Below, piece by piece: positions 7,916 to 28,313 of a stretch of DNA of 64,000 nucleotides (within the stretch, counting starts at the first letter, position 1; every line of letters starts with the position of its first letter). The translations under genes were made by a program, and so were the position numbers. The stretch spans positions 186,001 to 250,000 of IMG/VR virus record IMGVR_UViG_3300034117_002447; one strand, written 5' to 3'. Under the pieces are notes generated by a model. That model saw only the letters and a list, made by a program, of their open reading frames with translations, did no database searches and had not been told where the DNA came from.

Positions 7916-7922
7916 TTGTTAA

Positions 7923-8588: not shown

Positions 8589-8601
8589 ATAAGAGTATGG
8601 G

Positions 8602-11388
8602 TTATTTCCAAAAGTAGATTAATTGTAGTGCATTATTGTAGCCGCACATTAGCATGTAAGAATTAAAACCTAGTTTATTTAGTCGACTAACGAAATTGTT
8701 TCTAAGGTCTTCATTAAACCCTAAGTGTTCGTGATGGTACTCTACTGCGATATTTCTGATCTTTGATAAATTCTCATCGCTTATTCCATTTAGCGCAATA
8801 ATTTCAGAGCCTTCAATATCTACCTTTAAAAAGTCAATTCGGTCGATTAATTTATTCTCCAGAATGAAATCTAAGGTATATAAGTTTACGTCGTATTGGG
8901 TCTGTAATGGATCTTTATGATGCCATAAGTTAGATCCCCCTAGGTGAGAACTTTCAGTAAGAGTTAAGGTTCCCAAGTTATCAGCAATTGCTGCATTAAA
9001 TAGGACCGCATTTTCTGGAGCATTCTGTTTTAAGATTTCAAAGTATCGACGATCAGGCTCGAAAGTTACAATTTTACTTGCGCCCATGTGATATGCATAT
9101 CGGGTAAAGATTCCAAGATTACCGCCCAAATCCACAACAACATCGCCGGGTCTAACCTTAACTTCTCCATGTTCGTAATCTTTTAGATTATAGATCTCAT
9201 GATAGATTGCGTAATCCCAACCGTATTGATGAGCAATATCCATTGTTCCTCCTGGTACATCTTTAATTGAGCCAAGATTTTTGATTTCATTTTTACCAAC
9301 AAAGAAGTATTCAGTATCGTGGAAGTTTTTATCACGCTGAGTCTCGATATAGTCTGTCATAACCGTTGCGAATCCAAGATCTTTATTTCCATGAAAGTAG
9401 AGAATATTTGATTTATCTTTAGGTACGAATTGCCAGCCGAATATTTTTCCAAAGTTCTTTGGGCCAGAGTCTCTCCAAAACGAGATAAAGTGTTCCATTG
9501 CTTTGCCAGTTGTTCCCAATAAGTCGCCGTCCCATTCTGAGACATCAAAGTTTGAAATTGGCAAAAATGTCGTAAAATTGTGTTTACTTCTCAAGTAATT
9601 ATCGAGACCTTCATCGTTCCATTGTAGTAATTCGTCGTATTGGTCAAGCGGTGTTTCTTTGTACATTTTAAGAATCTCATCAAAGAACCAGGTACACTCT
9701 TTATTGTAGACGTACATGCAAATATGAGCCTTTGTAAATAACCTCTTGACACCATCTCGGTCGCAGATACTTTGGTTAAATAATTGTCTTCCACGAAGTC
9801 CGTCTTTTCTGGTAAAGAAGCCAATAAAATCGTCCTGTATGTGAACGTCTGGAATTGGATAATTTGTAATCTGGCTAAAGTACTTAACGATATTGTCAAT
9901 ATTATAATTTGCAACAATATCTCCGTCTAACCAAACTAAATTCTCGAAACTTTCTTGAATAGCTGCTTCTTTACACGCATACTGTTTCCAATACCATTTA
10001 TCGTGTTCTGAATGATATGGAATACTTAATGTTCGGCTAATAACGTTTGGATGATTAAACGGAACTTCACAGTCTATTCCATATACGAGAATTTTACGAT
10101 TTGAGAATTTAGCTAACGATATAACTAATTTCTCAATGATTGGCATGTATGCTAGATTACCACAGGTCACCCATGCAAAGTCAGTTGAGTATTCAATTGA
10201 CTGCGGGCTAATAAGTTCCTGAATGTGATCTTGTGCGATCGTGGCAGCATTCTGCCAAGTAAATTCATTTCTAATTTGTTCTGATTCCATTAATGCTGAT
10301 TTTTTATAATTTTCAAACTGGTCGTAAACTAGTCTAAGTTTTATTTGAAGATCTGAGAAATTAGGCTCACAGAAATTACCTGGAGTATTCTGATTCCAAG
10401 ACTCCTCATTTGCTACACCTGCTGGAACTTCGCCAATAATTGAAACTGGAATACCCTTACCTTGAGCAAACTGCAGTTGTGCTCCCCAATTTGAGTACAT
10501 TGATGGAACTCCGCATGACATTGCCTCAATTAATGGAAGATTCCAGCCTTCACTTCTGGCACATGACACAAAAACGTCAGCCGACTTAAGTAGTTTTACG
10601 TAATCTTCTTTTGACTGATGGTGTAGTACTTTAATTCCTGAATGAGAAAGCTCAAACTTAGCTAATCTCTCCTCAGTAGAAGAGAGGCCGTCCGTTGCAA
10701 ATCGATTATCTACGCTAATGACAAGCTCAACATTCTCATCTTGTGAAAAGGTTTCAGTAAAAGCTCTGATAATTTCTTTGGTTGACTTACGATATTCCCA
10801 GCGACCCACTACGACAAATCGGAAAGGCCTGTTCTCTGGAAAAGCCGAATCCGGTGAGGTCGGTTTAAACATCTCAGTGTCTACTCCCTCTGGTACAACT
10901 TTTACTTTATGTGATGCGATTCCTTGCTCAATTGTGCACTGTTTTTGCCATTCACTAGGAACCCAAACTTGATCGAACTTTTTAAGTTGAGCAAAGAAGT
11001 CTTCAGGTTGTCTAGTTGTTTCCCATACATTGTATGCAATTGATGGACCTGAGTAATCTTGGCTAAAGTACAGGTGACCTGTGTCATTTAGCACAATATT
11101 AACAGTTGGCTCAGTAGATTGAATTGGGTACTTCAAGTATAGAGGAAACTCCGCATGACCTGTTTGAGTACCTAACGTTTGTTCAGATAACATCGTCTTT
11201 AACTCAGAGTCTATATAATACTCCCCATTGTGAGGCTCATCGTCATTGTAACCTTTCCATGAATCGCCGATCGTCCAATTTCTAACTGAAACTGGCGTTA
11301 ATTGATTTAGAGCTTTAAAGAAATTTCGTGAATGGCAATTATATCCGGTATCGCCTATTATTGAAGTGTGAGCTTTGATTAGAGTCAT
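8602..11388 (-). CDS. Tri-domain enzyme: GT4 (GT-B) glycosyltransferase + GT-A-like DxD domain + FkbM-family methyltransferase
   Basis: GRWEYRK and DVFVSCARSEGWNLPLIEAMSCGVP (GT4); VWLDGDIV (DxD); VVDLGGNLG...FEPD...LKVDIEGSE (FkbM). Start moved to the ATG at 11388 (MTLIKAH). Confidence 0.8.
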   Translation of the reverse strand: MTLIKAHTSIIGDTGYNCHSRNFFKALNQLTPVSVRNWTIGDSWKGYNDDEPHNGEYYIDSELKTMLSEQTLGTQTGHAEFPLYLKYPIQSTEPTVNIVLNDTGHLYFSQDYSGPSIAYNVWETTRQPEDFFAQLKKFDQVWVPSEWQKQCTIEQGIASHKVKVVPEGVDTEMFKPTSPDSAFPENRPFRFVVVGRWEYRKSTKEIIRAFTETFSQDENVELVISVDNRFATDGLSSTEERLAKFELSHSGIKVLHHQSKEDYVKLLKSADVFVSCARSEGWNLPLIEAMSCGVPSMYSNWGAQLQFAQGKGIPVSIIGEVPAGVANEESWNQNTPGNFCEPNFSDLQIKLRLVYDQFENYKKSALMESEQIRNEFTWQNAATIAQDHIQELISPQSIEYSTDFAWVTCGNLAYMPIIEKLVISLAKFSNRKILVYGIDCEVPFNHPNVISRTLSIPYHSEHDKWYWKQYACKEAAIQESFENLVWLDGDIVANYNIDNIVKYFSQITNYPIPDVHIQDDFIGFFTRKDGLRGRQLFNQSICDRDGVKRLFTKAHICMYVYNKECTWFFDEILKMYKETPLDQYDELLQWNDEGLDNYLRSKHNFTTFLPISNFDVSEWDGDLLGTTGKAMEHFISFWRDSGPKNFGKIFGWQFVPKDKSNILYFHGNKDLGFATVMTDYIETQRDKNFHDTEYFFVGKNEIKNLGSIKDVPGGTMDIAHQYGWDYAIYHEIYNLKDYEHGEVKVRPGDVVVDLGGNLGIFTRYAYHMGASKIVTFEPDRRYFEILKQNAPENAVLFNAAIADNLGTLTLTESSHLGGSNLWHHKDPLQTQYDVNLYTLDFILENKLIDRIDFLKVDIEGSEIIALNGISDENLSKIRNIAVEYHHEHLGFNEDLRNNFVSRLNKLGFNSYMLMCGYNNALQLIYFWK

Positions 11389-11486
11389 TGACTTGATAAT
11401 TGTTTCTATTTTATACTCGATTTTTATATTTTGTTTAGGTAAACCGTAAAAAATATTTAAGTATAAAAGTAAAAACACAAAGATAC

Positions 11487-12077
11487 GTGGAACGAAGATT
11501 AATGTTTCCTCAAAAAGAGGTAGAATTATTGAACTGGTACTGGTTTAGCGAGGGCTTCTCAGCGGAAGAAATTGATAGAGTTCGCAAAGTATCAGAACTT
11601 TTTGAATATCATCAAGCTGTTACTTTTGGAAATCAAGGAGAAAACCATAAAATTAGAAAGAGCAAAATTAAATGGTTAGGCGAGAATAACGAATCGACTA
11701 AATGGATTTATGATAAGTTGATGGAATTTGCAATAATTGCAAATCGAGAACTTTGGAATTTTGACCTAATATCAATAATTGACTCAATCCAGTACACTGA
11801 ATATTATGAAGGTGGTGGTCACTATGATTACCATGTAGATCTTGGACCAGGTTCAGCATCTCACCGGAAAATTAGTATTGTTGTACAATTAAGCGACCCT
11901 TCTGAATACGAAGGCGGCGATTTTGAAATACTTAAAGGAATAACTCCTGATAAATTGCCCCGAAATAAGGGAGCAACTATTTTATTCCCAAGTTACCTAT
12001 TACATAGAGTAACTCCAGTAACCAAAGGAATTAGGCGAAGCCTAGTTATTTGGATAGGAGGAAATTCATTAAGATAA
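11487..12077 (+). CDS. 2OG-Fe(II) oxygenase, prolyl-4-hydroxylase/PKHD-like
   Basis: HxD (YDYHVD), RKISIVVQLSDPSEYEGG, distal His in HRVTPVTKG and the 2OG-binding RRSLV; GTG start. Confidence 0.85.
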   Translation: MERRLMFPQKEVELLNWYWFSEGFSAEEIDRVRKVSELFEYHQAVTFGNQGENHKIRKSKIKWLGENNESTKWIYDKLMEFAIIANRELWNFDLISIIDSIQYTEYYEGGGHYDYHVDLGPGSASHRKISIVVQLSDPSEYEGGDFEILKGITPDKLPRNKGATILFPSYLLHRVTPVTKGIRRSLVIWIGGNSLR

Positions 12078-12386: not shown

Positions 12387-14999
12387 TTACATTGGTATAA
12401 CATTAACAAGTAATCCGTTGACAAATTGCAACAGCATCATAGATCGACCATCAAAAACCATTATATCACCAGTATAGCCGCCTCCGCTGCCTCCGCCGCC
12501 TCCATCCGCACCAGGAGGTCCGGGTGCTCCAGCAGGTCCAGTTCCTCCAGGAGTTCCAGCAGGTCCAGCAGGCCCGGCTGGACCAGTTAATCCGGTAGGT
12601 CCAGTTAATCCAGTAGGTCCTTGAATTCCTTGAGGACCTGGGGCACCAGCAGGACCAGTTCCTCCAGGTGAACCGTCTCTACCTGAAGTACCTGAAGAAC
12701 CGGCTTCTCCCCTAGGCCCTTGAATTCCCTGAGGTCCAGTTGCTCCAGCTGGGCCAGTTAATCCAGTAGGGCCAGTTAATCCAGTAGGTCCAGTATTACC
12801 AATTGGACCCTGAATTCCTTGAGGACCAGTAGCTCCAGTAGGACCAGTTATTCCACTTGTACCGGAAGAGCCTGCTTTTCCAGAAGTACCTGAGCTACCT
12901 GGTGCTCCAGCTAATCCAGTAGGTCCAGTTGCCCCAGCCGGGCCTTGAATTCCCTGAGGTCCAATTGGGCCAGTTAATCCAGTAGGTCCTTGAATTCCTT
13001 GAGGACCTGTTCCGCCAGGTGAACCGTCTCTACCGGAAGTACCAGAAGAACCATTTTCTCCCCTAGGGCCTTGAATTCCTTGAGGACCAGTTAATCCGGT
13101 AGGGCCGGTTAATCCAGTAGGTCCAGTATTACCAATTGGACCCTGAATTCCTTGAGGACCAGTAGCTCCAGTAGGACCAGTAGCACCGGTTGGACCAGTT
13201 ATTCCGCTTGTTCCAGAAGTACCTCTTGTTCCAGAAGAACCTGAGCTACCTGATGCACCAGCAGGTCCGATTGGGCCGGTTGCTCCGGCTGGACCTTGAA
13301 TTCCTTGAGGACCAGTAGCACCAGTTGGACCAGTTGCCCATGATCCATATCCTGAACCTGAATACCAAGTATGACCGGTTGGTATAGTAGTAAATCCAGG
13401 ATTCCATTTTAGTGAGCTATTATCTCCGTTTGATGCACATATAAAGATCCATGTATCTGAGGGTCTTTGAGTGTCCGTATATGATTTAACTATTAAATAA
13501 CTTGCGTTATAGGGACTAGCCATTCCCCTAGGAGGTGCATAGTATAGAGCAGACCATGTTCCAAGAGCAACTGTTTCTGGGCCAATATCGAAATGACCAG
13601 CTGTTCCGAAAGCTTTAGCGACAGGTATCGCAATTACTCTACCTGACCAAGTGACATTATTTCCGTCCCATGATACGTTACCTCCACCCGAGACAGTCCA
13701 TGTTGCATTAACTGTGTCGTATTCAGTTGGGCCCTGAGGTCCAGTAGGTCCAAGAGGTCCAGTAGGTCCAAGAGGACCAATCGGACCAGTTGCTCCACTT
13801 GTACCGGAAGTACCTCTTGTTCCAGAAGAACCTGAGCTACCTGGTGCTCCAGTTGGACCAAGAGGACCAGTTGCTCCAGCTGGACCTTGTATTCCTTGAG
13901 GACCAGCAGGTCCGATTGGACCAGTTGCTCCACTTGTACCGGAAGTACCTCTTGTTCCAGAAGAACCTGAGCTACCTGGTGCTCCAGTTGGACCAAGAGG
14001 ACCGGTAGGACCAAGAGGACCAGTTAATCCAGTTGGGCCAGTTTGACCGCTAGTTCCTGAAGAACCATTTGCTCCAGCTGGACCTTGGATTCCTTGAGGA
14101 CCAGTAGGCCCAAGAGGTCCAGTAGCTCCAGCTGGACCTTGAATTCCTTGAGGACCGGTTGGACCGGTTATTCCACTTGTACCAGAAGTACCTCTTGTTC
14201 CAGAAGAACCTGAACTACCTGGTGCTCCAGTTGGGCCGATTGGGCCAGTAGCTCCAGTAGGACCAGTTGGTCCAGTTATTCCGCTTGTTCCAGAAGAACC
14301 ATTTGAACCTGAAGTTCCAGAAGCACCTGACATACCGCTTGTTCCTGAAGAACCAGTAGGACCAGTCGCTCCAGTTGGACCAGTATTACCAATTGGACCT
14401 TGAATACCCTGAGGGCCAGTTGGTCCAGTTATTCCACTAGTTCCAGAAGAACCGTTTGTTCCGGCTGGACCTTGAATACCCTGAGGACCGGTTGGTCCAG
14501 TTATTCCACTTGTACCAGAAGTACCAGCAGTTCCTGAAGTACCTCTTGTTCCAGAAGAACCTGAGCTACCGGGTGCTCCAGTAGGTCCAGTTGCTCCAGT
14601 TGGACCTTGAATTCCTTGAGGACCAGTTGGACCAGTTATTCCACTTGTACCAGAAGTACCAGCAGTTCCTGAAGTACCTCTTGTTCCAGAAGAACCTGAC
14701 GAACCGGATGTACCTGAAGTACCTCGTGTTCCGGAAGAACCTGAACTGCCGTTTGAGCCTGACGTTCCGCTTGTTCCAGAAGAACCTGCGGCTGACACCC
14801 AAGAGGTTCCATTAAACCTATAAATGTTTTTATCTGCTCGATTGTAGAGAATCGCGCCTTCCTTTGCATTAGCTCGACCTCTACTTATATTATCAACTAG
14901 AGTTAGAGCAAAACCGTTTACGCCGGAGGTTCCAGCGGTTCCGCTTGTACCTTCTCCAAATTCTACTCCGCCTGGTGCATTAATTTTATAACTACTCAT
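12387..14999 (-). CDS. Collagen-like fibre protein (GPT/GPQ/GIQ triplets interleaved with GSS/GTS triplets) with a central ~130-aa globular insert
   Basis: Gly at every third residue over most of the 870 aa; non-repetitive insert at about 13340-13725. Confidence 0.85.
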
Positions 15000-15013: not shown

Positions 15014-18000
15014 TTATGGAAGCATTCCATTACTTATTATTTCATATCTAGCTGCTAATGTAATACGATTATTGGCATTATTGTTAATCTTTACAGCAAG
15101 ATCAGTTCCACCGGCTCCGACTGTAATTGTGGCAGTCCATAGGGATGCATCTTGAGCAACAACAATTTCGGTGAAACCTGCACCTACTAGTGAAAGAGCA
15201 CCGGCTATATTCTTAACCGCTCCAGTGTAGTGGCGATAATCAGTTGAACCGGTAACCTCTTCAGAACCTACTACGTATAATTCAATACCGTATATTCGAT
15301 TAGGGGTTGGAAAGTCAAATAGGATAGGTGTACCTGGATCAATGAATAATTGACCAGCTGCCATGGGGTTAATCCGTCCAGAATAGAGTACTCCATTATG
15401 AACTAATTTTTCGCGATCGTCAGATGCAGACTGTTTACCGTAAATGTATTCTTTAGGTCGACCGTCATATAGTGCAACTGGTCCTAATAGTAAAACATCA
15501 TTAGTATCGTCTTCTCTAATATCGAAAGTTGAATCTTCAATAGTAGTCCCAGAAGCACCGTATGTTACGTATGTATTAAATGTACCGGACGTTGTGATTG
15601 ACGTACCTGATGTTCCAGCTGAACCTGAAGTACCAGAAGTACCTCTTGTTCCAGAAGAACCTGAAGTACCTGAAGAACCTGTTCCACCAGGTGCACCAGT
15701 TGCTCCACTAGTTCCAGAAGTACCAGAAGTACCTCTTGTTCCAGAAGAACCAGACGAACCGGATGTTCCAGCCGTACCGCTTGAGCCGTTTGAACCAAAT
15801 GTTACAAACGAAATTGTATAGTTTATTCCATTCGTTAGTGTTCCATTTGCGGCGATTGGCGCAAGTCCAAGATCAAACCATGTTGTGTTATTGGTAATTG
15901 AAATAAGTCTGTAAATACCTATTATGCTATTATTACCAACTTCGGTAATTTGAATTAAGCTATTAGAGGTTATTAATGATAACCAGGTTGCGTAGTTTAC
16001 ACTAGCAGAAGAAGTTGTAGATACGCTAAGTTTAGCTAGCGCAGCGAAGGTAGCACTATCTGTTCTAAAGAATGTTGCTCCAGGGTTAGAGTGTGCTGGT
16101 ATACTTGAATCAAATAACCATCTACCGCTATTTGAACCGTCAATACCGGCAATACCAGTCGCTCCGGATGTTCCGCTTGAGCCGTTTGAACCAGAAGTAC
16201 CAGAAGTACCTCTTGTTCCAGAAGAACCAGAAGAACCATTTGAACCAGAAGTACCAGAAGAACCAGAAGAACCATTTGAACCAGAAGTACCAGAAGAACC
16301 AGAAGTACCAGAAGTACCTCTTGTTCCAGAAGAACCAGAAGAACCATTTGAACCAGAAGTACCAGAAGAGCCTGATGTACCAGACACTCCGTCTATACCG
16401 GAGGTTCCGCTTGAACCAGCTGATCCTGAAGTACCACTTGAGCCGTTTGAACCAGAAGTTCCAGAAGTACCGCTTGTGCCTCTTGTTCCAGAAGAACCTG
16501 AGCTACCATTTGAACCGGAAGTTCCGCTTGATCCATTTGAACCTGAAGTTCCTGATGTACCTGAAGAACCGTTTGAGCCGCTTGTTCCAGAAGAACCTGA
16601 GCTACCATTTGAACCGCTTGTTCCACTTGATCCATTTGAACCAGATGTTCCAGACGTTCCAGAAGAACCGTTTGAACCGGATGTACCTGAACTTCCAGCT
16701 GAACCTGATGTTCCAGAAGAACCGTTAGAACCGGAAGTACCTGATGTTCCACTTGAGCCGTTTGCACCAGAAGTACCTGATGTACCGCTTGATCCATTTG
16801 AACCTGAAGTACCTGATGTACCACTAGTACCTCGTGTCCCAGACGAACCTGAGCTACCATTTGAACCGGATGTACCTGAAGAACCTGAAGTTCCGGATAC
16901 TCCGTCTATACCAGAAGTTCCGCTTGAACCGGAAGTACCTGAAGTACCAGAAGTACCTCTTGTTCCAGAAGAACCAGAAGAACCATTTGAACCGGAAGTA
17001 CCAGATGTACCTGAACTTCCATTAGAACCTGACGTACCTGAAGTACCTGAGCTACCATTAGAACCCGAAGTTCCACTTGATCCATTTGAACCAGAAGTAC
17101 CAGATGTTCCAGAAGAACCGTTAGAGCCGGATGTTCCGGAAGTTCCGCTTGATCCATTTGAACCAGATGTACCTGAAGTTCCACTTGAGCCGTTAGAACC
17201 AGATGTTCCTGAAGTACCAGAAGTACCTCTTGTTCCAGAAGAACCTGAACTACCGTTTGAACCTGAAGTACCAGAGCTTCCATTCGAACCAGAAGTACCT
17301 GAAGAACCACTTGTACCACTTGAGCCGTTTGAACCTGACGTTCCAGAAGAACCATTTGAACCTGAAGTTCCCGAAGTTCCCGAAGAACCATTTGAACCTG
17401 AAGTTCCAGAAGAACCATTTGAACCTGATGTACCTGATGTGCCTGAAGAACCGGCTGTTCCAGAAGTACCGCTTGTACCGCTTGTACCTCTTGTTCCAGA
17501 AGAACCTGAGCTACCATTTGAACCTGACGTACCGGAACTACCATTTGAACCGGAAGTACCTGACGAACCTGAAGTTCCTGATACTCCATCTATACCAGAT
17601 GTTCCACTTGATCCGTTTGAACCTGACGTTCCAGATGTACCAGATGTTCCTGAAGTACCTCTTGTTCCAGAAGAACCGGAGCTACCGTTTGAGCCTGACG
17701 TACCTGAACTTCCATTTGAACCTGAAGTTCCGCTTGTTCCAGAAGAACCATTTGAACCAGATGTTCCTGAAGTTCCAGAAGAACCATTTGAACCGGAAGT
17801 ACCAGAGGTTCCACTTGATCCATTTGAACCGGAAGTACCAGAGGTTCCACTTGATCCATTTGAACCAGATGTACCTGATGTACCGCTTGTGCCTCTTGTT
17901 CCAGAAGAACCGGAGCTACCGTTTGAGCCTGAAGTACCTGAACTTCCATTTGAACCTGAAGTTCCGCTTGTACCTGAGCTACCATTAGAACCGCTTGTAC

Positions 18001-21000
18001 CTGATGTACCAGATGTACCAGAAGTACCTCGTGTTCCAGAAGAACCGCTTGATCCGTTAGAGCCTGATGTTCCAGAAGAACCTGATGTTCCAGATACTCC
18101 ATCTATACCAGAAGTTCCAGAAGATCCATTAGAACCTGAAGTTCCAGAAGTACCGCTTGTTCCTCTTGTTCCAGAAGAACCACTTGAGCCGTTTGAACCT
18201 GAAGTACCACTTGAACCATTTGAACCTGAAGTCCCGCTTGAGCCGCTTGAACCGTTTGAACCTGATGTTCCAGATGTTCCACTTGATCCATTTGAACCTG
18301 ATGTACCAGAGCTTCCATTAGAACCAGAAGTACCTGACGTACCTGAGCTACCGTTTGAACCTGAAGTACCTGACGTACCTGAGCTACCGTTTGAACCAGA
18401 CGTACCTGAGCTACCGTTTGAGCCGCTTGATCCTGAAGTACCAGAAGTACCTGATGCTCCAGATGCGCCGCTTGTTCCAGATGAACCGTTTGAACCGGAA
18501 GTACCAGCTGTACCGCTTGTTCCAGAAGTTCCAGAGCTACCATTTGAACCTGATGTTCCTGAAGTGCCGGAAGAACCATTAGAACCTGAGGTTCCAGAAG
18601 AACCGTTTGAACCTGAAGTTCCACTAGTTCCAGAAGAACCATTTGAACCGGAAGTACCAGCTGTACCTGAAGTACCACTAGTTCCTCTTGTTCCAGAAGA
18701 ACCACTTGAGCCGTTAGAACCACTTGAACCGGAAGTACCTGAGCTTCCATTTGAACCGGAAGTACCAGCAGAACCTGAAGTTCCTGATACTCCATCTATA
18801 CCTGATGTTCCACTTGAACCTGACGTACCTGAGGTACCGCTTGTACCTGAAGTACCTCGTGTTCCAGAAGAACCTGAGCTACCATTTGAACCACTTGTTC
18901 CAGAAGAACCGTTTGAACCTGATGTTCCACTTGAGCCGGAAGTACCTGAAGAACCTGAAGTACCAGCTGTTCCGGAAGAACCGTTAGAACCAGATGTTCC
19001 GGAAGAACCATTTGAACCGGAAGTACCGGATGTTCCACTTGATCCGTTTGAACCTGAAGTACCACTTGATCCGTTTGAACCTGATGTTCCGCTTGTTCCT
19101 GAGCTACCGTTAGAACCAGAAGTCCCGCTTGTTCCTGAAGAACCGTTAGAACCAGAAGTCCCAGAAGATCCATTTGAACCGGACGTCCCGCTTGTTCCTG
19201 AAGTCCCGCTTGTACCGGATGTTCCTCTTGTTCCAGAAGAACCTGAGCTTCCATTTGAACCAGAAGTTCCACTTGAGCCGTTAGAACCTGATGTTCCAGC
19301 TGAACCTGAGGTTCCGGATACACCGTCTATACCTGAAGTACCTGAAGAACCGGACGTTCCAGCTGTACCACTTGTTCCGGATGTACCTGAAGTACCTCTT
19401 GTTCCAGAAGAACCTGAGCTACCGTTAGAACCAGAAGTTCCCGAAGAACCGTTTGAACCAGAAGTACCTGATGTACCTGAGCTACCATTTGAACCAGACG
19501 TGCCAGATGAACCGTTTGAACCTGAAGTTCCAGAAGTACCTGAACTTCCATTAGAACCTGAAGTTCCACTAGTTCCAGAAGAACCATTAGAACCTGAAGT
19601 TCCACTAGTTCCAGAAGAACCATTAGAACCAGAAGTACCTGAAGTACCGCTTGTACCTGAAGTACCTCTTGTTCCAGAAGAACCGCTTGAGCCGTTTGAA
19701 CCACTAGTTCCAGAAGAACCGTTTGAACCTGAAGAACCTGATGTACCAGAGCTACCATTTGATCCTGAAGTTCCGCTTGTTCCAGAAGTACCAGAGCTAC
19801 CATTTGAACCTGAAGTACCAGCTGAACCTGATGTTCCAGAAACACCGTCTATACCTGACGTTCCAGAGCTACCATTTGAGCCTGATGTACCTGATGTTCC
19901 AGAAGTACCTCTTGTTCCAGAAGAACCAGAAGAACCATTTGAACCAGAAGTTCCACTTGAGCCGGAAGTTCCTGAAGAACCTGAAGTTCCAGCGGTTCCA
20001 GAAGAACCGGAAGTACCGCTTGAGCCATTAGACCCAGAAGTTCCGCTTGTTCCAGAAGAACCTGAGCTTCCATTAGAACCAGATGTACCGGATGTACCAG
20101 TTGAACCTGATGTACCAGATGTTCCAGCAGTACCGCTTGAACCATTAGATCCAGAAGTTCCAGAAGAACCTGAAGTTCCAGACGAACCGTTTGATCCTGA
20201 AGTACCTGAAGTACCCGAGCTACCGTTTGAACCGGAAGTTCCTGATGTTCCAGAGCTTCCATTAGAACCAGAAGTTCCAGAAGATCCATTAGAACCAGAT
20301 GTACCAGAAGTACCTGAAGAACCTGAAGAACCGGAAGTTCCGCTTGAACCGGATGTTCCTGACGTACCTGAACTTCCATTTGAACCAGAAGTCCCAGATG
20401 TTCCTGAAGAACCATTAGAACCCGATGTTCCTGAAGTACCTCTTGTTCCAGAAGAACCAGAAGAACCATTTGAACCAGAAGTTCCAGAAGTACCAGCAGA
20501 ACCTGACGTTCCTGATACTCCATCTATACCTGATGTTCCGCTTGAACCTGAAGTACCTGAAGTACCTCTTGTTCCAGAAGAACCTGAAGAGCCATTTGAA
20601 CCAGAAGTTCCAGAAGAACCGTTTGATCCTGAAGTACCTGAAGTACCTGAACTTCCATTTGAACCTGAAGTCCCAGATGTTCCGGAAGAACCGTTTGACC
20701 CGGAAGTTCCAGAAGTACCTGAGCTTCCATTTGAACCGGAAGTACCTGATGTTCCTGAAGTACCCGATGTTCCTGAGCTACCATTTGAACCTGATGTACC
20801 TGAAGTACCAGAGCTTCCGTTTGAACCAGAAGTTCCAGATGTTCCAGAAGAACCATTTGAACCGGACGTACCGCTTGTTCCAGAAGAACCATTTGAACCT
20901 GATGTTCCGGATGTTCCAGAAGTACCTCTTGTTCCAGAAGAACCAGACGAACCGTTTGAACCAGAAGTTCCGGAGCTTCCATTTGATCCTGAAGTACCAG

Positions 21001-24000
21001 CTGAACCTGACGTTCCTGATACTCCATCTATACCGGAAGTTCCCGAGCTACCACTTGTACCTGAAGTACCGCTTGTTCCAGAAGTACCTCGTGTTCCAGA
21101 AGAACCTGAACTTCCATTTGAACCGGAAGTTCCTGATGTGCCAGAGCTTCCATTAGAACCAGAAGTTCCAGAAGAACCGCTTGTACCACTTGATCCGTTT
21201 GACCCTGAAGTTCCAGATGTTCCAGAAGAACCGTTTGAACCTGATGTACCTGAAGTTCCAGAAGATCCATTAGAACCAGATGTACCAGAAGATCCATTAG
21301 AACCTGAGGTTCCAGAAGAACCTGAAGTACCGGATGTACCATTTGAACCATCTACTCCGCTTATACCTGAAGTACCAGAAGTACCTCGTGTTCCAGAAGA
21401 ACCTGAGCTACCATTTGAACCACTTGTTCCAGAAGAACCGTTTGAACCTGAAGTTCCACTTGATCCGTTTGAACCTGAAGTTCCAGAAGAACCATTAGAG
21501 CCTGAAGTACCAGCAGAACCTGAAGTTCCAGATACTCCATCTATACCGGAAGTACCAGAAGAACCGGCTGTTCCGGAACTTCCATTTGATCCTGAAGTAC
21601 CGCTTGAGCCGTTTGAACCAGAAGTACCTGACGTTCCTGAGCTGCCGTTTGAACCTGAAGTTCCAGCTGTTCCAGAAGAACCATTAGAACCGCTTGTCCC
21701 AGAAGTACCTGAGCTACCATTAGAACCAGATGTTCCACTTGAGCCGTTTGAACCAGAAGTACCGGCGGTTCCTGAGGTTCCAGACGTACCTGAAGTTCCT
21801 GAGGTTCCGCTTGTACCAGTCGATCCTGACGTTCCGGATGTTCCGCTTGTACCAGCAGTGCCTGATGAACCTGATGTTCCAGAAGAACTTGAAATTTGGC
21901 CAGTTGAGGTTAACACAAAAGAGTAATTTTGAGTTCCCTCAGTGTACCAAGTCACATCATGATTTCCACTAGACTGATCGACTACGTATATTTTAACAAT
22001 CATTCTATCCGTTGGATTAATAGTTGTTGTTGGTAGCACTACATCAACGTTAGCTTCAACTGGAATCGTTGAACTAATCCAACCTATAAGAACTTGATTA
22101 GTTGGTATTACTGTTCCATAACTAACACCTGCACTATTTGCTAATTCAATAGTAACAAATGTGTCTGTATTAAATCCTGCGCCGTCTTTTAAGAAATGTA
22201 AATGGAATCTTTGTGTTCCTCCTGGTATTACAGAAAATCCTAATTCAGGAGTTATAAATTGTTGTACTAATACTGGAGTAGTACCTGTTGTAGTTTTAAG
22301 TATTGATTGTTGAGCAGCGCCGGTCGGATTAATATTTAGGTCTCTATACGTACCTATTCCAGAAGCAACTGACTGATTAAAATAATAAATTTGACCTGCC
22401 GATATTCCAGTAGCTCCACTAGTTCCTGAAGAACCAGATGTTCCACTTGAACCGGAAGTTCCAGAAGTTCCGCTTGTTCCAGAAGTTCCTGACGAACCTG
22501 AAGTTCCAGAAGTTCCGCTTGTACCCGCCGTGCCGGATGAACCTGATGTTCCCGAAGTTCCACTTGAACCAGAAGTTCCAGTAGTTCCAGAAGAACCTGA
22601 TGTTCCAGCCGTTCCGCTTGATCCATTTGAACCAGATGTTCCTGACGAACCAGAAGTACCTGAGCTACCGTCTGAACCTGAAGTTCCAGAAGAACCATTT
22701 GTTCCTGAGACTCCGTCTATTCCAGAAGTACCTGAAGAACCATCTGATCCTGACGTTCCAGAAGAACCATTTGAACCTGATGTACCAGATGTTCCTGACG
22801 AACCATTAGAACCACTTGTTCCAGAAGTACCTGAGCTACCATTTGAACCGGAAGTCCCTGATGTTCCAGAAGAACCGTTAGAACCTGATGTTCCTGACGA
22901 ACCAGAAGTACCTGAGCTACCGTCTGAACCCGATGTTCCAGAAGAACCGTTTGAACCTGAAGTACCAGATGAACCGTTAGAACCTGATGTTCCTGACGAA
23001 CCAGAAGTACCTGAGCTACCGGCTGAACCTGACGTACCAGAAGAACCATTTGTTCCTGAGACTCCGTCTATTCCACTAGTACCTGAAGAACCATCTGAGC
23101 CTGAAGTTCCAGAAGAACCATTTGAACCTGATGTACCAGAGGTACCATTTGAACCTGAAGTTCCAGAAGAACCATTTGAACCAGAAGTACCTGATGTTCC
23201 AGAAGAACCGTTTGAACCTGAAGTACCAGTTGAACCAGAAGTACCGGATGTTCCTGAAGAACCGTCTGAACCTGAAGTTCCTGAAGAACCGTTTGAACCT
23301 GATGTTCCAGAGCTACCATTTGAACCTGAAGTACCTGAAGTACCTGAGCTACCATCTGAGCCGGAAGTTCCGCTTGAGCCGTTTGTTCCTGAGACTCCAT
23401 CTATTCCAGAAGTTCCAGAAGAACCGTCTGAACCTGATGTACCGCTTGAGCCGTTAGAGCCTGAAGTACCAGATGTACCAGATGTTCCCGAAGAACCGTT
23501 AGAACCTGAAGTACCTGAAGTTCCAGAAGAACCTGAAGTACCAGAGCTACCGTTTGAGCCTGAAGTACCTGAGCTACCGTCTGAGCCACTAGTACCAGAA
23601 GAACCATTTGAACCAGATGTTCCTGAAGTACCAGAGCTACCATTTGAACCGGAGGTACCTGATGTTCCAGAAGAACCTGAAGTACCTGAGCTACCATCTG
23701 AACCTGATGTTCCCGAAGAACCATTTGTTCCAGAAACTCCGTCTATTCCAGAAGTTCCAGAAGAACCGTCTGAACCGCTAGTACCGCTTGAGCCGTTTGA
23801 ACCCGAAGTTCCAGAAGAACCGTTTGAACCTGAAGTTCCGCTTGTGCCGGAAGTTCCAGCTGAACCACTTGTTCCACTTGATCCGCTAGTACCCGAGCTA
23901 CCATTTGAGCCACTAGTACCTGAGCTACCATTTGAACCTGAAGTACCCGAAGTACCAGATGAACCAGAAGTACCGCTTGAGCCGTTTGAACCTGAAGTTC

Positions 24001-26206
24001 CTGAAGTACCTGAAGAACCGTTAGAACCAGAAGTACCTGAGCTACCGTCTGAACCTGACGTACCTGCTGAACCTGAAGTTCCTGATACACCATCTATTCC
24101 AGAAGTACCTGAAGAACCATCTGAACCTGAAGTTCCAGAAGAACCGTTTGAACCTGATGTACCGGATGTTCCAGAAGAACCGTTTGATCCTGAAGTTCCA
24201 GAAGAACCATCTGAACCTGACGTACCAGATGAACCATTTGTTCCTGAGACTCCATCTATTCCTGATGTACCTGAGCTACCGTCTGATCCTGAAGTACCTG
24301 AGGTACCATTTGAACCTGAAGTACCTGAGGTACCATTTGAACCGTTTGAACCTGAAGTTCCGTTTGAACCCGAAGTTCCAGAAGAACCATCTGAACCGGA
24401 CGTACCGGCAGAACCTGAAGTTCCTGATACTCCGTCTATTCCAGAAGTACCTGAGCTACCGTCTGATCCTGAAGTACCTGAGCTACCGTTTGATCCTGAA
24501 GTTCCAGAGCTACCATTTGAACCTGAAGTACCTGAGGTACCATTTGAACCTGAAGTACCGCTTGAGCCATCTGACCCTGAAGTTCCAGCCGAACCTGATG
24601 TTCCTGAGACTCCGTCTATTCCTGATGTTCCGGAAGATCCATTTGAACCAGAAGTTCCAGAAGAACCGTTTGAACCGGAAGTTCCAGAAGAACCATTTGA
24701 ACCGGAAGTACCTGAGCTACCGTCTGAACCTGACGTACCTGCTGAACCTGAAGTTCCGGAAACTCCGTCTATTCCTGATGTTCCCGAAGAACCGTCTGAC
24801 CCTGAAGTTCCAGAGCTACCATTTGAGCCTGATGTACCGCTTGAGCCGTTAGAACCTGAAGTTCCAGAAGAACCGTTTGAGCCTGATGTTCCAGAGCTAC
24901 CGTCTGAACCGCTTGTTCCAGAAGAACCGCTTGTTCCTGAGACTCCATCTATTCCTGAAGTACCTGAACTACCGTCTGAACCAGAAGTACCTGAAGTACC
25001 GGCTGACCCTGAAGTACCTGATGTTCCCGAAGAACCTGAAGTACCTGAGCTACCGTCTGAACCTGAAGTTCCAGCTGAACCTGAAGTTCCGGAAACTCCA
25101 TCTATTCCTGAAGTACCTGAGCTACCGTCTGAACCAGAAGTACCTGAAGAACCTGATGTACCAGTTGAACCAGAAGTACCTGATGTACCTGATGTACCTG
25201 AGCTACCGTCTGAACCTGAAGTTCCAGAAGAACCGTTTGTTCCAGAGACTCCATCTATTCCTGAAGTACCTGAGCTACCGTCTGAACCAGAAGTACCTGA
25301 AGAACCTGATGTACCAGTTGAACCAGAAGTACCTGATGTACCTGAGCTGCCGTCTGAACCTGAAGTTCCAGAAGAACCGTTTGTTCCAGAGACTCCATCT
25401 ATTCCTGAAGTACCAGAGCTGCCATCTGCACCAGAAGTCCCAGCTGAACCAGACGTTCCACTTGAACCGTTTGAGCCGGATGTACCAGAAGTACCGGTTG
25501 AACCGGACGTACCTGAAGTACCTGACGTACCAGATGAACCGGCAGTACCGGAAGTTCCACTTGTTCCTGAAGTACCGGATGAACTAGTAAGTCCATCTTC
25601 TAATGTTGTACCAATATAGTAAAAACCTTTAATATATGGATCAACTGATCCATAAGTAGAAGTTAAATAAGTAACCATTGAATCTGATAATAGTAGAATA
25701 CCATTATCGTAATTAAAAACCCAACTTACTTCAGTGCCTGCATTATCAGTAGTTAAGATTTGGGTTCCGCCTGATGCAGGATTACCATTCCAAAATTCAG
25801 CGGTCCATCCAATTGAAGGAGCACCGCTTGCTTGCAATATCTTTTGAGGTTGAATCCAGTCTAGGATTTGTGTGTTAAAATCGTTAAGCGTCGAACAGGC
25901 TACCCATGTAGTATTATTACCTGAAATAACTTGACTTAATTCTACGGCATTTCCTGTAGAATATGCGTCTGCTACAATCGTTTCCAACGGTTGACCTGAT
26001 GCTAATAGAGCAACAGCCGCTGATTTATTTGCAACTGGGTTTTGTTTAACAACATCGAACTGAGTTAAAACTCGAGCAGCTGATATATTAGGGTTAAACG
26101 CAAACTTTGCTTCGTACCAATTAAAATTAGAGGCAGAATCAATTACGTTTGCGGCTTGGACCTTAAATACGAGTTTTAATCTTTCATTATCTGTATAGCC
26201 TGCCAT
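15014..26206 (-). CDS. Giant 3730-aa Gly/Ser/Thr repeat fibre protein (proline-free Gly-X-Y) with four non-repetitive domains
   Basis: Uninterrupted ORF. Unique domains at about 25585-26206, 21895-22410, 15790-16170 and 15014-15600, separated by (GSS/GTS/GSN)n blocks. Confidence 0.85.
16170..21895 (-). repeat. Repeat block 2 (~1900 codons of Gly-X-Y; GSN/GTR-type)
   Basis: Degenerate 9-nt unit array with 10 GIDGVSG landmarks, all encoded GGT-ATA. Confidence 0.9.
22410..25585 (-). repeat. Repeat block 1 (~1050 codons of Gly-X-Y; GSD-type, Arg-free)
   Basis: Degenerate 9-nt unit array with 13 GIDGVSG landmarks, all encoded GGA-ATA. Confidence 0.9.
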
Positions 26207-26429: not shown

Positions 26430-28313
26430 TTAGTTGAATGTTACAGTCACTGTATCGATTCTAATAGCTGAATTGTGGATTTTAAATTCTACGTATATTC
26501 CGTTTGTTGCATTAAATCCTCCAAATGTTCCATTTATTGTATTTCCACTGGATGAACCTAATCGGATTTGACCATCAGTTGCACCATCATCAAATGTTCC
26601 AAAATTATAACCTGAACCGTTTAGGATTAATGGATACGAAGTAGGTCCAAAAACTCCAACGGTTGCTCCTATTTTACGAACAGTTACAGTAAGAGCACCG
26701 CTAATTAAATCAGCTAGAGCAGATCCGCCTGCGAAAGTTCCAGCGAATACCATTGAAAAACTAGGAATTGGAACGCTTGACGAACTTAGTGTAGTATAAA
26801 ATTTTCTATAGTACGATGCAGCTGCAGTAAGTGAAGAATAGTTTGGGTTTGAACCATTTAAGTCTGATTTAAAAGCAGCTAGATCGGGTTGAATTGTTGC
26901 AGTATTTGGTGCAGTTAAGAAATATTGATCAGGTCTAACGATTGTACCACCGACAACGCAAGCATTTCCGTTTGATAGACTTGCGGTAGAAACCCATGCA
27001 GTCGTGTAATCGCTTTGTAATCTAAAAGCCTCATCGTCAAATCGCTCTACGTATTGAGTGCTATTTCCACTAGTTGGATATGTGTCCACTAATATTGAAT
27101 GAGTTGAAGAAGATTTAGTTCCGCCTGAAGACCATGGATCAAATAGTGAAGCAGTCGCGGCTGCAGTTGCTCCTCGATACCTAAAATTTGAAGAATTAAT
27201 CGCCCAATTTAAAATATCATATTCAGCAGCTGTATTGTTGAAGAAATTGGTCCATCCAGTAAAAGTACCAGAAGTTGGTGACCATGCATATTCAGCAATA
27301 GTTGGAACTCCGTACGATGGTGCAACAAATTGAAAATTAGTATTTGCGCCAAGAGCACGGCCTTGAGTATTTGCGTTTAGGTTATTAATTGCATCAACGT
27401 GTGCACTAAACTGTGAAGTTAGAGTGTAGTACTCAACACCGCTTAGATGCTTGGTTACAATATTTCCTAGAGTTTCTTCGATTGTACAAGTTGAACCGGC
27501 TCCAAAGCTTGGAGTAGATGCATTTGTATCAAAGAAAACTGCAGATTGTGTATAAGTGAAAGTTTGAGCACCATCACTAGTTGAATCAGTTAGGTTTGTA
27601 ATAACTATATTGTATTTACCGCCGTCTATTAAACCTACGCCAGATAGTACTTGATCAATATCAACGGTTACGGTAATGTCAGCTTTTTGTTTTAAACTAT
27701 CAGTTGCAAAACCGGCAATAATAATGTCAATACCGTCTGTACTTGAATATGTCCCGTCTGCAGTAACTCCCTGAGAAAATGTTGAAATAATAGTGGTGCC
27801 ATCTGCATCATATACATCAACGGTTACCGTAGCGTCTCCGCCTTGACCAGTTACCGCATTTGCTGTACTGAATGAGACTGTGCTACTAGTTGTCGTTGAC
27901 TGATTTGTACCTGCCCAAGTTCCAGCCTTAAATGGAGTTCCTTCAGTCGTTGGATTGCTTATTCTAACCGTTGATCTAGCTAAAGTTTCTGATACTAATC
28001 CAGACGAGGTTCCGTCGTTTGTGCCAAAGTGACTTGCGAATGTTGGAGTAGGAACGTAAACATTTATTGTACTTGAATCTCCAGGTTTCTGAGCTCCAAG
28101 TATATCAATTCCAACAAAATTAACTTTTGAATAATTTCCGACAAGAACGCCTTCATCATAAAAATCAATTCCGCTAATTCCACTTGAGCCGGTATTTGGA
28201 GAATCATTCCAATATAAATTACCCGAATTATCTATTGCTAAAAATTTAGTCTTGGTGTTATCCTGGGATACTCCGCTAAGATCAACTTGTTTTATTTTAA
28301 GTTTGTGGGACAT
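26430..28313 (-). CDS. Ser/Thr/Gly-rich putative virion structural protein
   Basis: 627 aa, rich in beta-type T/S/G residues, first gene behind a late-promoter motif; carries a vestigial TGSSGISG. Confidence 0.6.
   Translation of the reverse strand: MSHKLKIKQVDLSGVSQDNTKTKFLAIDNSGNLYWNDSPNTGSSGISGIDFYDEGVLVGNYSKVNFVGIDILGAQKPGDSSTINVYVPTPTFASHFGTNDGTSSGLVSETLARSTVRISNPTTEGTPFKAGTWAGTNQSTTTSSTVSFSTANAVTGQGGDATVTVDVYDADGTTIISTFSQGVTADGTYSSTDGIDIIIAGFATDSLKQKADITVTVDIDQVLSGVGLIDGGKYNIVITNLTDSTSDGAQTFTYTQSAVFFDTNASTPSFGAGSTCTIEETLGNIVTKHLSGVEYYTLTSQFSAHVDAINNLNANTQGRALGANTNFQFVAPSYGVPTIAEYAWSPTSGTFTGWTNFFNNTAAEYDILNWAINSSNFRYRGATAAATASLFDPWSSGGTKSSSTHSILVDTYPTSGNSTQYVERFDDEAFRLQSDYTTAWVSTASLSNGNACVVGGTIVRPDQYFLTAPNTATIQPDLAAFKSDLNGSNPNYSSLTAAASYYRKFYTTLSSSSVPIPSFSMVFAGTFAGGSALADLISGALTVTVRKIGATVGVFGPTSYPLILNGSGYNFGTFDDGATDGQIRLGSSSGNTINGTFGGFNATNGIYVEFKIHNSAIRIDTVTVTFN

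What the first reader, a model, noticed from the sequence alone, without database searches (positions are those of the whole stretch)
16392..25403. Hidden ~57-residue ruler: GIDGVSG landmarks spaced at 1x, 2x, 3x and 4x a common unit, increasing N to C
Seen, from landmark positions read by hand. Block 1 spacings N to C in residues: 48, 51, 51, 60, 51, 60, 60, 54, then 117, 114, 111, 117. Block 2: 171, 168, 225, 174, 177, 231, 171, 228, 171. Every value is within 9 residues of a multiple of 57 (57, 114, 171, 228), and 171 recurs exactly three times. The only hydrophobic residues in the array (I, V) therefore appear on a quantised and progressively sparser grid. Inference: a 19-triplet structural module (fold-back length, binding site for a decorating protein, or enzyme docking register) or a fossil of ordered duplications.
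Basis: seen in the sequence. Interest (0 to 1): 0.6.

Follow-up and report, generated by a model that had tools for sequence, protein, structure and literature searches.

The report
Landmark spacing in giant phage collagen
The evenly stepped GIDGVSG landmarks are real and sit in a 3,730-residue collagen-like fibre gene of a 271-kb jumbo phage, but they look like the conserved cores of nested tandem repeats left by successive duplications, not a working 57-residue ruler.

Summary
There are 23 GIDGVSG motifs, and their spacings are precisely those listed. They lie in one gene (window 15014-26206, minus strand). It encodes an N-terminal virion-anchor domain, three uninterrupted Gly-X-Y arrays (1059, 1917 and 66 aa, with no proline in the two large ones), two globular knobs and a C-terminal domain.

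A quantum of 57 fits best. It survives a null that keeps the four length classes only modestly (p about 0.02-0.08).

- There is no 171-nt or 57-aa autocorrelation, with or without the landmarks. The real periods are 9, 12 and 51/60 aa.
- Homologues differ. One has spacings 54, 57, 93, 72, 78, 117, 156, 159, then 372, 582, 216. One has 48, 96, 96. One has almost no landmarks. Another has a quantum near 53.

What holds up:
- A roughly 50-60-aa ancestral unit, and probable unit doubling.
- An N-to-C thinning of landmarks in three lineages.
- Purifying selection on the 14-residue core [14 protein letters not shown].

Best reading: nested tandem repeats in a roughly 0.9 µm phage fibre, so the spacing is historical rather than functional.

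Side observation: the landmarks are the only +1-frame stop codons in the arrays.

The parts
15014..26206 (-). Gene for the 3730-aa collagen-like fibre protein (P0001).
   Evidence: The ORF and its translation. The arrays score 243-275 bits against Pfam Collagen PF01391, cut-off 27.2, and match collagen-like tail-fibre PHROGs. The long + strand ORFs across it are by-products: one antisense frame has 0 stops.
25577..26206 (-). N-terminal globular domain, aa 1-210; putative virion anchor.
   Evidence: Matches phrog_33494 and phrog_9417. 28-37% identical to the N-termini of non-collagen structural proteins of Shewanella phage 1/4 and Vibrio phages, encoded a few genes downstream of the major capsid gene in the two regions inspected (Shewanella phage 1/4 and Vibrio phage 1.121.O). 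78-83% identical in L008-L011.
22400..25576 (-). Gly-X-Y block 1, aa 211-1269: 353 uninterrupted triplets with 13 landmarks. Units of 48-60 aa, then 111-117 aa.
   Evidence: X is S or T; Y is S, N or D; no Pro. The periods found are 9, 51 and 60 aa.
21881..22399 (-). Globular knob between the arrays, aa 1270-1442; all-beta.
   Evidence: Homologous domains lie between collagen arrays in L008 and L009 and in the huge phage LR756502.1. The AF2 model has pLDDT 59.9 and is a beta-sandwich; only weak fold matches were found.
16130..21880 (-). Gly-X-Y block 2, aa 1443-3359: 639 uninterrupted triplets, 10 landmarks plus one degenerate one, and 22 GTR motifs. Units of 168-177 and 225-231 aa.
   Evidence: The dominant period is 12 aa. 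Units align in register only from about 15 aa before to about 30 aa after each landmark.
21347..21367 (-).
   Evidence: It also carries +1-frame stops.
15797..16129 (-). Second globular insert, aa 3360-3470.
   Evidence: No family, phage or PDB match.
15599..15796 (-). Gly-X-Y block 3, aa 3471-3536: 22 triplets with two GTR motifs.
15017..15598 (-). C-terminal globular domain, aa 3537-3730; presumed distal end. It is swapped for unrelated domains in the homologues.
   Evidence: No family or PDB relative.
22877..23230 (-). The only stretch that differs among near-identical strains (aa ~993-1110): a 9-nt indel and the loss of one 108-aa unit.
   Evidence: It coincides with the longest internal DNA repeat (lag 351 nt, 84% identity).
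12387..14999 (-). Neighbouring 870-aa collagen-like protein (P0004). It mixes Pro-rich GXY with the same [16 protein letters not shown] module in continuous Gly-X-Y runs.
26430..28313 (-). 627-aa gene directly upstream; a conserved partner of the fibre gene.
   Evidence: 29% identity (E 6e-38) to the gene directly upstream of the N-domain homologue in Shewanella phage 1/4.
5183..12077 (.). Putative modification cassette: a 2OG-Fe(II) oxygenase (11487-12077, +), a GT4 glycosyltransferase fused to an FkbM methyltransferase (8602-11478, -), a methyltransferase (7923-8588, -), and a methyltransferase with a GT9-like domain (5183-7915, -).

Best explanation
The gene encodes a very long trimeric collagen-like fibre of a jumbo phage. 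It has an N-terminal virion anchor, three Gly-X-Y arrays separated by beta-rich knobs, and an exchangeable distal domain. At 0.286 nm per residue the arrays would span about 0.87 µm.

GIDGVSG is the centre of a selected 14-residue motif, [14 protein letters not shown]. This motif marks the start of a higher-order repeat unit. The arrays grew by tandem duplication of such units in successive generations:
- units of ~50-60 aa near the N-terminus;
- then units of ~114 aa, probably two modules with the second landmark lost;
- then units of ~171/228 aa filled with 9-aa and 12-aa sub-repeats.

Spacings cluster because units of one generation are copies of each other. The near 1:2:3:4 ratio is partly additive history and partly coincidence. 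Nothing in the sequence between landmarks measures 57 residues, and the spacing is not conserved in relatives, so the grid is historical, not a working ruler.

Shown: the anatomy, the nested periods, selection on the motif, the lack of a 57-aa period, and the divergent homologues. Inferred: the triple helix, the fibre role and the order of duplications.
For: - Exact anatomy.
- Nested periods of 9, 12 and 51/60 aa, and none at 57 aa.
- Internal DNA duplications at lags of 33, 78 and 90 aa, not 57.
- Units share positional homology only around the landmark: 0.87 identity in the first 15 aa, falling to the 0.60 background by 30 aa.
- The 14-residue core is invariant in 23/23 copies while neighbouring synonymous sites are scrambled: Ser at -5 uses AGY 8 times and TCN 15 times, Asp is GAT 13 and GAC 10, and Val uses four codons.
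- Three of four ~114-aa units keep a central GSDGSSGTS boundary at 54-63 aa, and GISGVDG splits one 171 into 60+111.
- Near-identical strains differ only by a 9-nt indel and by the loss of one whole 108-aa unit.
- Homologues share the N-domain and the first landmarks near aa 260 and 315, but have other spacings.
- The class-preserving null gives only p 0.02-0.08.
Against: - The class means (54.4, 114.8, 172, 228) fit 1:2:3:4 better than most random draws (42/2000).
- The three other X-position non-Ser/Thr sites in block 2 (offsets 60, 111 and 48 from the preceding landmark) all fall on the grid (chance about 0.05).
- The six ~171-aa units keep their length within 9 aa although their interiors no longer align. 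Length selection would also explain this.
- A codon-level scan for decayed landmarks found no enrichment at grid positions, so the landmark-loss step is not directly shown for 3x and 4x.
- Gapped unit-to-unit DNA identities gave no duplication order.
Confidence: 0.6

Rival explanations
1. Functional spacing. The [14 protein letters not shown] collars are binding, register-keeping or lateral-association sites on the triple helix. Their spacing is under selection, with a base step near 16 nm, dense near the virion and sparse distally.
For: The motif is under purifying selection. The first landmarks near aa 260 and 315 are kept even in L009, which lacks them elsewhere. Landmarks thin out from N to C in three lineages (Spearman rho 0.92, 0.95, 0.73). 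The ~171 and ~228 length classes are tight although the unit interiors are scrambled. Class-level p is about 0.02.
Against: There is no 57-aa signal between landmarks. Homologues with the same motif have off-grid spacings (L008: 3 of 11 on the grid; L037: 48, 96, 96). L009 has arrays of 588 and 870 aa with none or one. One natural strain lacks a whole unit. The three lineages share ancestry, so the gradient is not independent evidence.
Confidence: 0.15
2. Coincidence without modular ancestry. The long units reached ~114, ~171 and ~228 aa by expansion of 9-aa and 12-aa sub-repeats, then were copied. The integer ratios are a post-hoc fit.
For: Unit interiors are runs of GSNGSSGTS and [12 protein letters not shown]. 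The top DNA lag in block 2 is 36 nt. Internal duplications have lags of 33, 78 and 90 aa. Only about four length classes are independent, and the quantum was chosen after looking. L008 shows units of 72, 78 and 93 aa.
Against: The central GSDGSSGTS boundaries in three of four double units give halves of 51-63 aa. The degenerate landmark sits at 60+111. L037 repeats a 1x, 2x, 2x pattern on its own 48-aa base. Null p is 0.02.
Confidence: 0.15
3. Frameshift traps. The landmarks persist because ATA followed by GAY creates the only +1-frame stop codons in arrays that are otherwise open for thousands of codons. Their spacing then caps the length of frameshifted products.
For: All 13 and 12 +1-frame stops of blocks 1 and 2 lie in landmarks. 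Ile is ATA in 23/23 landmarks, against 33% in the globular parts of the same protein and 17-24% genome-wide. ATA before G occurs in 51 of 54 cases across four lineages.
Against: Only NTN codons can give +1 stops in such arrays, so the coincidence is partly forced. The arrays have a general rule that the third base matches the next first base (TCA before A 82%, TCT before T 87%), which explains ATA-A and ATT-T. Val, Asp and the flanking residues are conserved as protein. L009 and L008 tolerate 790-800 codons without a +1 stop. This reading predicts no quantum.
Confidence: 0.07

Closest known systems
Phage collagen-like tail-fibre or side-fibre proteins (Pfam PF01391; PHROGs 6320, 5073, 1806)
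   Same: Uninterrupted Gly-X-Y arrays between a virion-binding N-terminus and an exchangeable globular distal domain. Strong profile matches. The neighbouring gene P0004 is a typical member.
   Different: About 3040 residues of Gly-X-Y instead of tens to a few hundred. No proline in the two large arrays: X is Ser or Thr, and Y is Ser, Asn, Asp or Arg. Globular knobs are inserted between the arrays. Whether the fibre sits on the head or the tail is unknown.
Head-fibre-like appendages of jumbo myoviruses of the Tenacibaculum PTm1/PTm5, pT24 and Sphingomonas PAU group (Kawato et al. 2020, as cited in PMC8643167)
   Same: A neighbouring 1199-aa structural protein is 24-30% identical to proteins of Sphingomonas phage PAU, Tenacibaculum phage pT24, and Chryseobacterium and Flavobacterium jumbo phages. 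That group is reported to carry long flexible appendages.
   Different: The relationship is distant. I did not show that those appendages are made by a homologue of this gene.
Glycosylated bacterial and viral collagen-like filaments (Bacillus BclA exosporium nap; giant-virus collagen-like fibres). Named from general knowledge.
   Same: Thr/Ser-rich Gly-X-Y repeats encoded beside glycosyltransferases, with repeat-number polymorphism between strains.
   Different: No sequence relationship outside the repeats. Glycosylation is not shown here. The higher-order landmark architecture is not described for them, as far as I know.
Higher-order tandem repeats in repetitive structural proteins and satellites
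   Same: Nested periods (9/12 aa inside 50-230-aa units). Conserved unit cores with diverged interiors. Unit gain and loss between strains.
   Different: Here the unit core is a selected peptide motif, and unit length rises along the molecule.
Molecular rulers such as phage tape-measure proteins, and the 234-residue D-period of fibrillar collagen. Named from general knowledge.
   Different: No periodic residue pattern at 57 aa exists between the landmarks, and the spacing is not conserved in homologues. This defining feature was tested and not met.

Membership tests
Collagen triple-helix repeat (PF01391) | Uninterrupted Gly at every third residue over long runs, scoring above the family cut-off. 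| tested here: met
   Runs of 353, 639 and 22 triplets. 243 and 275 bits against a cut-off of 27.2.
Collagen triple-helix repeat (PF01391) | Three chains forming a triple helix. | not testable with these tools
Indirect support: P0004 joins the same Ser/Thr modules in register with Pro-rich GXY.
Collagen triple-helix repeat (PF01391) | Imino-acid-rich X/Y positions. This is typical of the family, not strictly defining. | tested here: not met
   No Pro in blocks 1 and 2.
Phage collagen-like tail fibre (PHROGs 6320/5073/1806) | Profile match plus the layout anchor domain, collagen stalk, distal globular domain. | tested here: met
   E 1e-90 to 1e-160 on the arrays, although these matches are driven by composition. 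The conserved N-domain and swapped C-domains in homologues.
Phage collagen-like tail fibre (PHROGs 6320/5073/1806) | Location on the tail. | not testable with these tools
   In the two regions inspected (Shewanella phage 1/4 and Vibrio phage 1.121.O), the N-domain homologues lie a few genes from the major capsid gene. The AF2 model of the N-domain was unusable, pLDDT 46.9.
Structural ruler or periodic docking grid of 57 aa | A 57-aa (171-nt) periodicity in the sequence beyond the landmarks. | tested here: not met
   z from -0.9 to 1.0 at 57 aa, with no peak at 114, 171 or 228 aa in block 2.
Structural ruler or periodic docking grid of 57 aa | Spacing quantum conserved in homologues. | tested here: not met
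   L008: 3 of 11 on the grid, quantogram 0.48 at 57. L037: 48, 96, 96. L010: best quantum 53-54, 14 of 22 on the grid. L009: nearly no landmarks.
Structural ruler or periodic docking grid of 57 aa | A second landmark class on the same grid. | tested here: not met
   GTR-to-GTR spacings: 10 of 21 within 9 of a multiple of 57, where chance gives about 8 (from the positions).
Higher-order tandem repeat array | Nested periods and a conserved unit core. | tested here: met
Higher-order tandem repeat array | Unit-number change between close relatives. | tested here: met
   L007 lacks one 108-aa unit. Other strains carry a 9-nt indel. The rest of the 10.6 kb compared is identical.

The most novel reading that the evidence does not exclude
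The [14 protein letters not shown] collars are functional sites on a proline-free, probably glycosylated triple helix nearly one micrometre long. They could be register clamps, lateral-association patches, or docking points for the neighbouring modifying enzymes. On this reading their graded spacing (about 16 nm near the virion, widening distally in whole steps) is itself selected, so the fibre carries a positional code.
Probability: 0.12. Interest if true: 0.65.

Novelty: new variant of a known kind. Interest (0 to 1): 0.35.

Why it matters
This analysis replaces an attractive 'hidden ruler' with a reading that the evidence supports and that can be tested.

It also describes an unusual phage fibre family:
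- Gly-X-Y arrays of 1,000 to more than 3,300 residues built only from Ser, Thr, Asn and Asp.
- A strictly conserved hydrophobic collar motif.
- A landmark density that falls from the virion-proximal to the distal end in three lineages.
- A 2OG-oxygenase, glycosyltransferase and methyltransferase cassette next door.

Such fibres bear on how jumbo phages of Bacteroidota-like hosts reach their cells. They also bear on how a triple helix without imino acids might be stabilised. The gene shows how a long repetitive gene can stay stable, since no internal DNA repeat exceeds about 220 nt at about 85% identity. Finally, it gives a clean natural case for testing whether off-frame stop codons are selected in repeat genes.

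Tried and rejected
- AF2 model of the knob: pLDDT 59.9. The best Foldseek matches were weak (birnavirus VP2 jelly roll at TM 0.38, CBM22/CBM4, Pgp3), so I assigned no fold.
- AF2 model of the N-domain: pLDDT 46.9, unusable.
- PDB sequence searches of three domains: nothing.
- ESM Atlas: only unnamed viral clusters, plus a 0.82 lead to YomF_N that I did not pursue.
- Megablast of the flanking genes against the phage collection: no match.
- Codon-level profile scan for decayed landmarks, with the Ile, Asp and Val codons masked. The top hits were mostly 24-aa shifts of true landmarks. Five of about 20 non-trivial hits fell on the grid, which is no enrichment.
- Gapped unit-to-unit DNA identities (76-89%) showed no grouping. 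A (short, short, long) super-repeat is hinted at by the first-GTR offsets (52, 34, 28, then 61, 34, 37) but remains unproven.
- GASGASG (aa 2580) as a decayed landmark: rejected as unparsimonious, because Ile to Ala and Asp to Ser each need two base changes.
- Helical-pitch explanation: rejected from known geometry, because 57 is not a multiple of the 21- or 30-residue triple-helix repeats.


Full report
**What is there.** The finding lies inside one ORF, window 15014-26206 on the minus strand, encoding 3730 aa. The window belongs to a single 271,290-bp contig, a jumbo phage genome. The genome carries 26 tRNA genes and has 38% GC.

The protein has these parts:
- a 210-aa N-terminal globular domain;
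- Gly-X-Y block 1 (aa 211-1269, 353 uninterrupted triplets);
- a 173-aa all-beta knob;
- block 2 (aa 1443-3359, 639 triplets);
- a 111-aa insert;
- block 3 (22 triplets);
- a 194-aa C-terminal domain.

In the two large blocks X is almost only Ser or Thr, Y is Ser, Asn, Asp or Arg, and there is no proline. The arrays score 243-275 bits against Pfam Collagen and match collagen-like tail-fibre PHROGs. At the textbook rise of 0.286 nm per residue, the 3042 Gly-X-Y residues would span about 0.87 µm, and 57 residues would span about 16 nm. This length is an inference.

**Context.** The N-domain matches phrog_33494 and phrog_9417. It is 28-37% identical to the N-termini of non-collagen structural proteins of Shewanella phage 1/4 and several Vibrio phages. 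In the two regions inspected (Shewanella phage 1/4 and Vibrio phage 1.121.O), these are encoded a few genes downstream of the major capsid gene. The 627-aa gene directly upstream of the fibre gene is homologous (E 6e-38) to the gene directly upstream of that homologue, so the two form a conserved pair.

A neighbouring 1199-aa protein is 24-30% identical to proteins of jumbo phages of Flavobacterium, Chryseobacterium and Tenacibaculum (pT24), of Sphingomonas phage PAU and of Prevotella. The PTm1/PTm5/pT24/PAU group is reported to carry head-fibre-like appendages (PMC8643167).

Downstream lies a second collagen-like gene, P0004. It joins Pro-rich GXY with the same [16 protein letters not shown] module found in block 2, within continuous Gly-X-Y runs. 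This argues that the Ser/Thr modules are compatible with a triple helix. Beyond P0004 lies a cassette of a 2OG-Fe(II) oxygenase, GT4 and GT9-like glycosyltransferases and methyltransferases.

- a degenerate landmark, GISGVDG, at aa 1614, which splits the first 171 into 60+111;
- GI(S/A) triplets at the ends of both blocks;
- a second landmark class of 22 GTR triplets in block 2.

**Is it more than chance?** A cosine quantogram peaks exactly at 57. Against 21 independent spacings this is extreme (0/2000). But the spacings are not independent. They fall into four classes with means 54.4, 114.8, 172 and 228, and the members of each class are copies of one another. Keeping the within-class scatter and drawing the four centres at random gives p = 42/2000. 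If the fourth class is simply the third plus the first, p = 159/2000. The integer ratios are therefore suggestive but not compelling, and the quantum was chosen after looking at the data.

(1) *Autocorrelation.* DNA identity at lag 171 nt is 0.585 in block 1 (z -0.6) and 0.610 in block 2 (z 0.2). The real peaks are 27 nt and 153/180 nt in block 1 and 36 nt in block 2. At the level of triplets, lag 19 (57 aa) has z between -0.9 and 1.0 in every sub-region, whether or not the landmarks are masked. The top lags are 9 aa, 12 aa and 51/60 aa. In a local-similarity lag spectrum, block 1 shows only the landmark spacings themselves. In block 2, 57 aa ranks 14th of 100 lags and 114 aa ranks 66th. Internal DNA duplications have lags of 12, 33, 78 and 90 aa. 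GTR-to-GTR spacings fall within 9 of a multiple of 57 in 10 of 21 cases, where chance gives about 8.

(2) *Homologues*.
- Five near-identical strains share the pattern, apart from 111 becoming 114 in three of them and the loss of one 108-aa unit in L007. These are the only differences in 10.6 kb.
- L008 (79% N-domain identity, same GIDGVSG and GTR motifs) has spacings 54 57 93 72 78 117 156 159, then 372 582 216. Three of 11 are on the grid, and the quantogram at 57 is 0.48.
- L037 has 48, 96, 96.
- L009 keeps only the two N-proximal GID landmarks. Its arrays of 588 and 870 aa have none or one.
- L010 and L011 use a different landmark, [15 protein letters not shown]. In L010, where the spacings were measured, they are 57 54 63, then 99-114 fourteen times, then 141 135 96 159 174. 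The best quantum is 53-54.
- L039 and L040 place a hydrophobic residue about every 18 aa.
- Relatives at 40% identity have ordinary short arrays of the GTQGIQ or GPQ type.

**What survives.** A unit of about 50-60 aa is real and ancestral. It forms the eight short units of block 1, and it appears as the N-proximal units of L008 (54, 57), L009 (51), L010 (57, 54, 63) and L037 (48). The first landmarks sit near aa 260 and 315 in all of these lineages.

Doubling is plausible. Three of the four ~114-aa units contain a central GSDGSSGTS, the motif that otherwise immediately precedes a landmark. It ends 63, 54 and 57 aa after the unit start, which leaves halves of 51-63 aa. L037 also shows 48, 96, 96.

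For the 3x and 4x classes the only internal hints are GISGVDG (offset 60), GASGASG (offset 111) and one GAN (offset 48). A codon-level scan for decayed landmarks found no enrichment on the grid. The interiors of block-2 units are runs of 9-aa and 12-aa sub-repeats, and they align in register only from about 15 aa before to about 30 aa after each landmark.

Landmark spacing rises from N to C in all three lineages where it can be measured (Spearman rho 0.92, 0.95, 0.73). Because these lineages share ancestry, this is one observation rather than three.

**The landmark itself is selected.[14 protein letters not shown] is invariant in all 23 copies. Most synonymous sites within it are as scrambled as the array's codon usage allows. 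Ser at position -5 uses AGY 8 times and TCN 15 times, Asp is GAT 13 times and GAC 10 times, and Val uses four codons. DNA identity among landmark contexts is only 58-89%. No internal DNA repeat exceeds about 220 nt at 79-86% identity. This also explains why independent assemblies agree, and why the only strain-variable spot coincides with the longest repeat.

**Most likely mechanism.** The arrays are higher-order tandem repeats built by successive rounds of unit duplication, with growth or fusion of units distally. The landmark is the selected core of each unit, and its spacing reflects history (confidence 0.6).

Three rival readings remain:
- functional spacing of binding or register sites (0.15);
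- coincidence through sub-repeat expansion alone (0.15);
- landmarks kept as +1-frame stop codons (0.07; this would explain the motif, not the quantum).

**Side observation.** In the +1 frame, the only stops in block 1 (13) and block 2 (12) are the TAG codons created by ATA followed by GAY in the landmarks. The +2 frame has 38 and 64 stops, and one antisense frame has none. Ile is ATA in 23/23 landmarks, against 33% in the protein's globular parts and 17-24% genome-wide. The same preference holds in the homologues: ATA before G occurs in 51 of 54 cases across the four lineages.

The arrays also obey a general rule that the third base of a codon matches the first base of the next codon (TCA before A 82%, TCT before T 87%). 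This explains the ATA-A and ATT-T pairs without invoking stop codons. I therefore record this as a lead, not a finding.

**Not done or not possible.** The fibre's position on the virion, its glycosylation and the triple helix itself remain inferences.

Noticed in passing
window 16130-25576 (-), arrays of P0001: In the sense +1 frame, the only stop codons in both large arrays are the TAG codons made by ATA followed by GAY in the landmarks (13 and 12). The minus-strand alternative-frame ORFs of 107-230 aa are simply the inter-landmark stretches. One antisense frame has no stop at all, which produces the spurious 1816-aa and 1029-aa plus-strand ORFs.
   Followed up: yes
window 16379-25405 (-); L008, L010, L011: Ile is ATA in 23/23 landmarks, against 17-24% genome-wide. 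ATA before G occurs in 51 of 54 cases across lineages. The arrays also show a strong context rule that the third base equals the next codon's first base (A or T), which explains part of this.
   Followed up: partly
window 5183-12077: Next to the two collagen-like genes lies a cassette of a 2OG-Fe(II) oxygenase (PF13640), a GT4 glycosyltransferase fused to an FkbM methyltransferase, another methyltransferase, and a methyltransferase with a GT9-like domain. These are candidate fibre-modifying enzymes. The big fibre has no Pro or Lys, but P0004 is Pro-rich.
   Followed up: partly
window 12387-14999 (-): The 870-aa neighbour alternates canonical Pro-rich GXY (of the [11 protein letters not shown] type) with the [16 protein letters not shown] module that recurs 22 times in block 2 and twice in block 3 of the big fibre. 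The module is therefore shared between two genes.
   Followed up: partly
window 22877-23230 (-); L003, L004, L005, L007, L012: Across five near-identical metagenomic genomes, the first 10.6 kb of the gene is identical except in this stretch. Here there is a 9-nt indel, local rearrangements, and the loss of one 108-aa unit. The stretch coincides with the longest internal DNA repeat.
   Followed up: yes
L008-L011, L035, L039/L040: Fibres of this family are modular. The N-domain is conserved. Arrays range from under 200 to over 3300 residues. The 'YYFNQS' knob recurs between collagen arrays, also in a 642-kb huge phage. The C-terminal domains are unrelated to each other. L011 has at least 1111 uninterrupted triplets.
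   Followed up: partly
window 26430-28313 (-); L022, L040: The 627-aa gene upstream of the fibre is a conserved partner (homologue upstream of the Shewanella phage 1/4 fibre-like gene). In relatives at 40-55% identity, a similar segment appears to be fused to the C-terminus of the fibre protein itself, which suggests gene fusion or fission.
   Followed up: no
genome C1 55651-82103 (outside the window): 26 tRNA genes, including three with anticodon CAT. One of these could be a lysidine-type tRNA-Ile that reads ATA.
   Followed up: no
window 36141-38495 (-): A 784-aa ORF with a weak, sub-threshold Collagen match near its N-terminus (E 0.005). It may be a third protein with a short Gly-X-Y stretch.
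   Followed up: no
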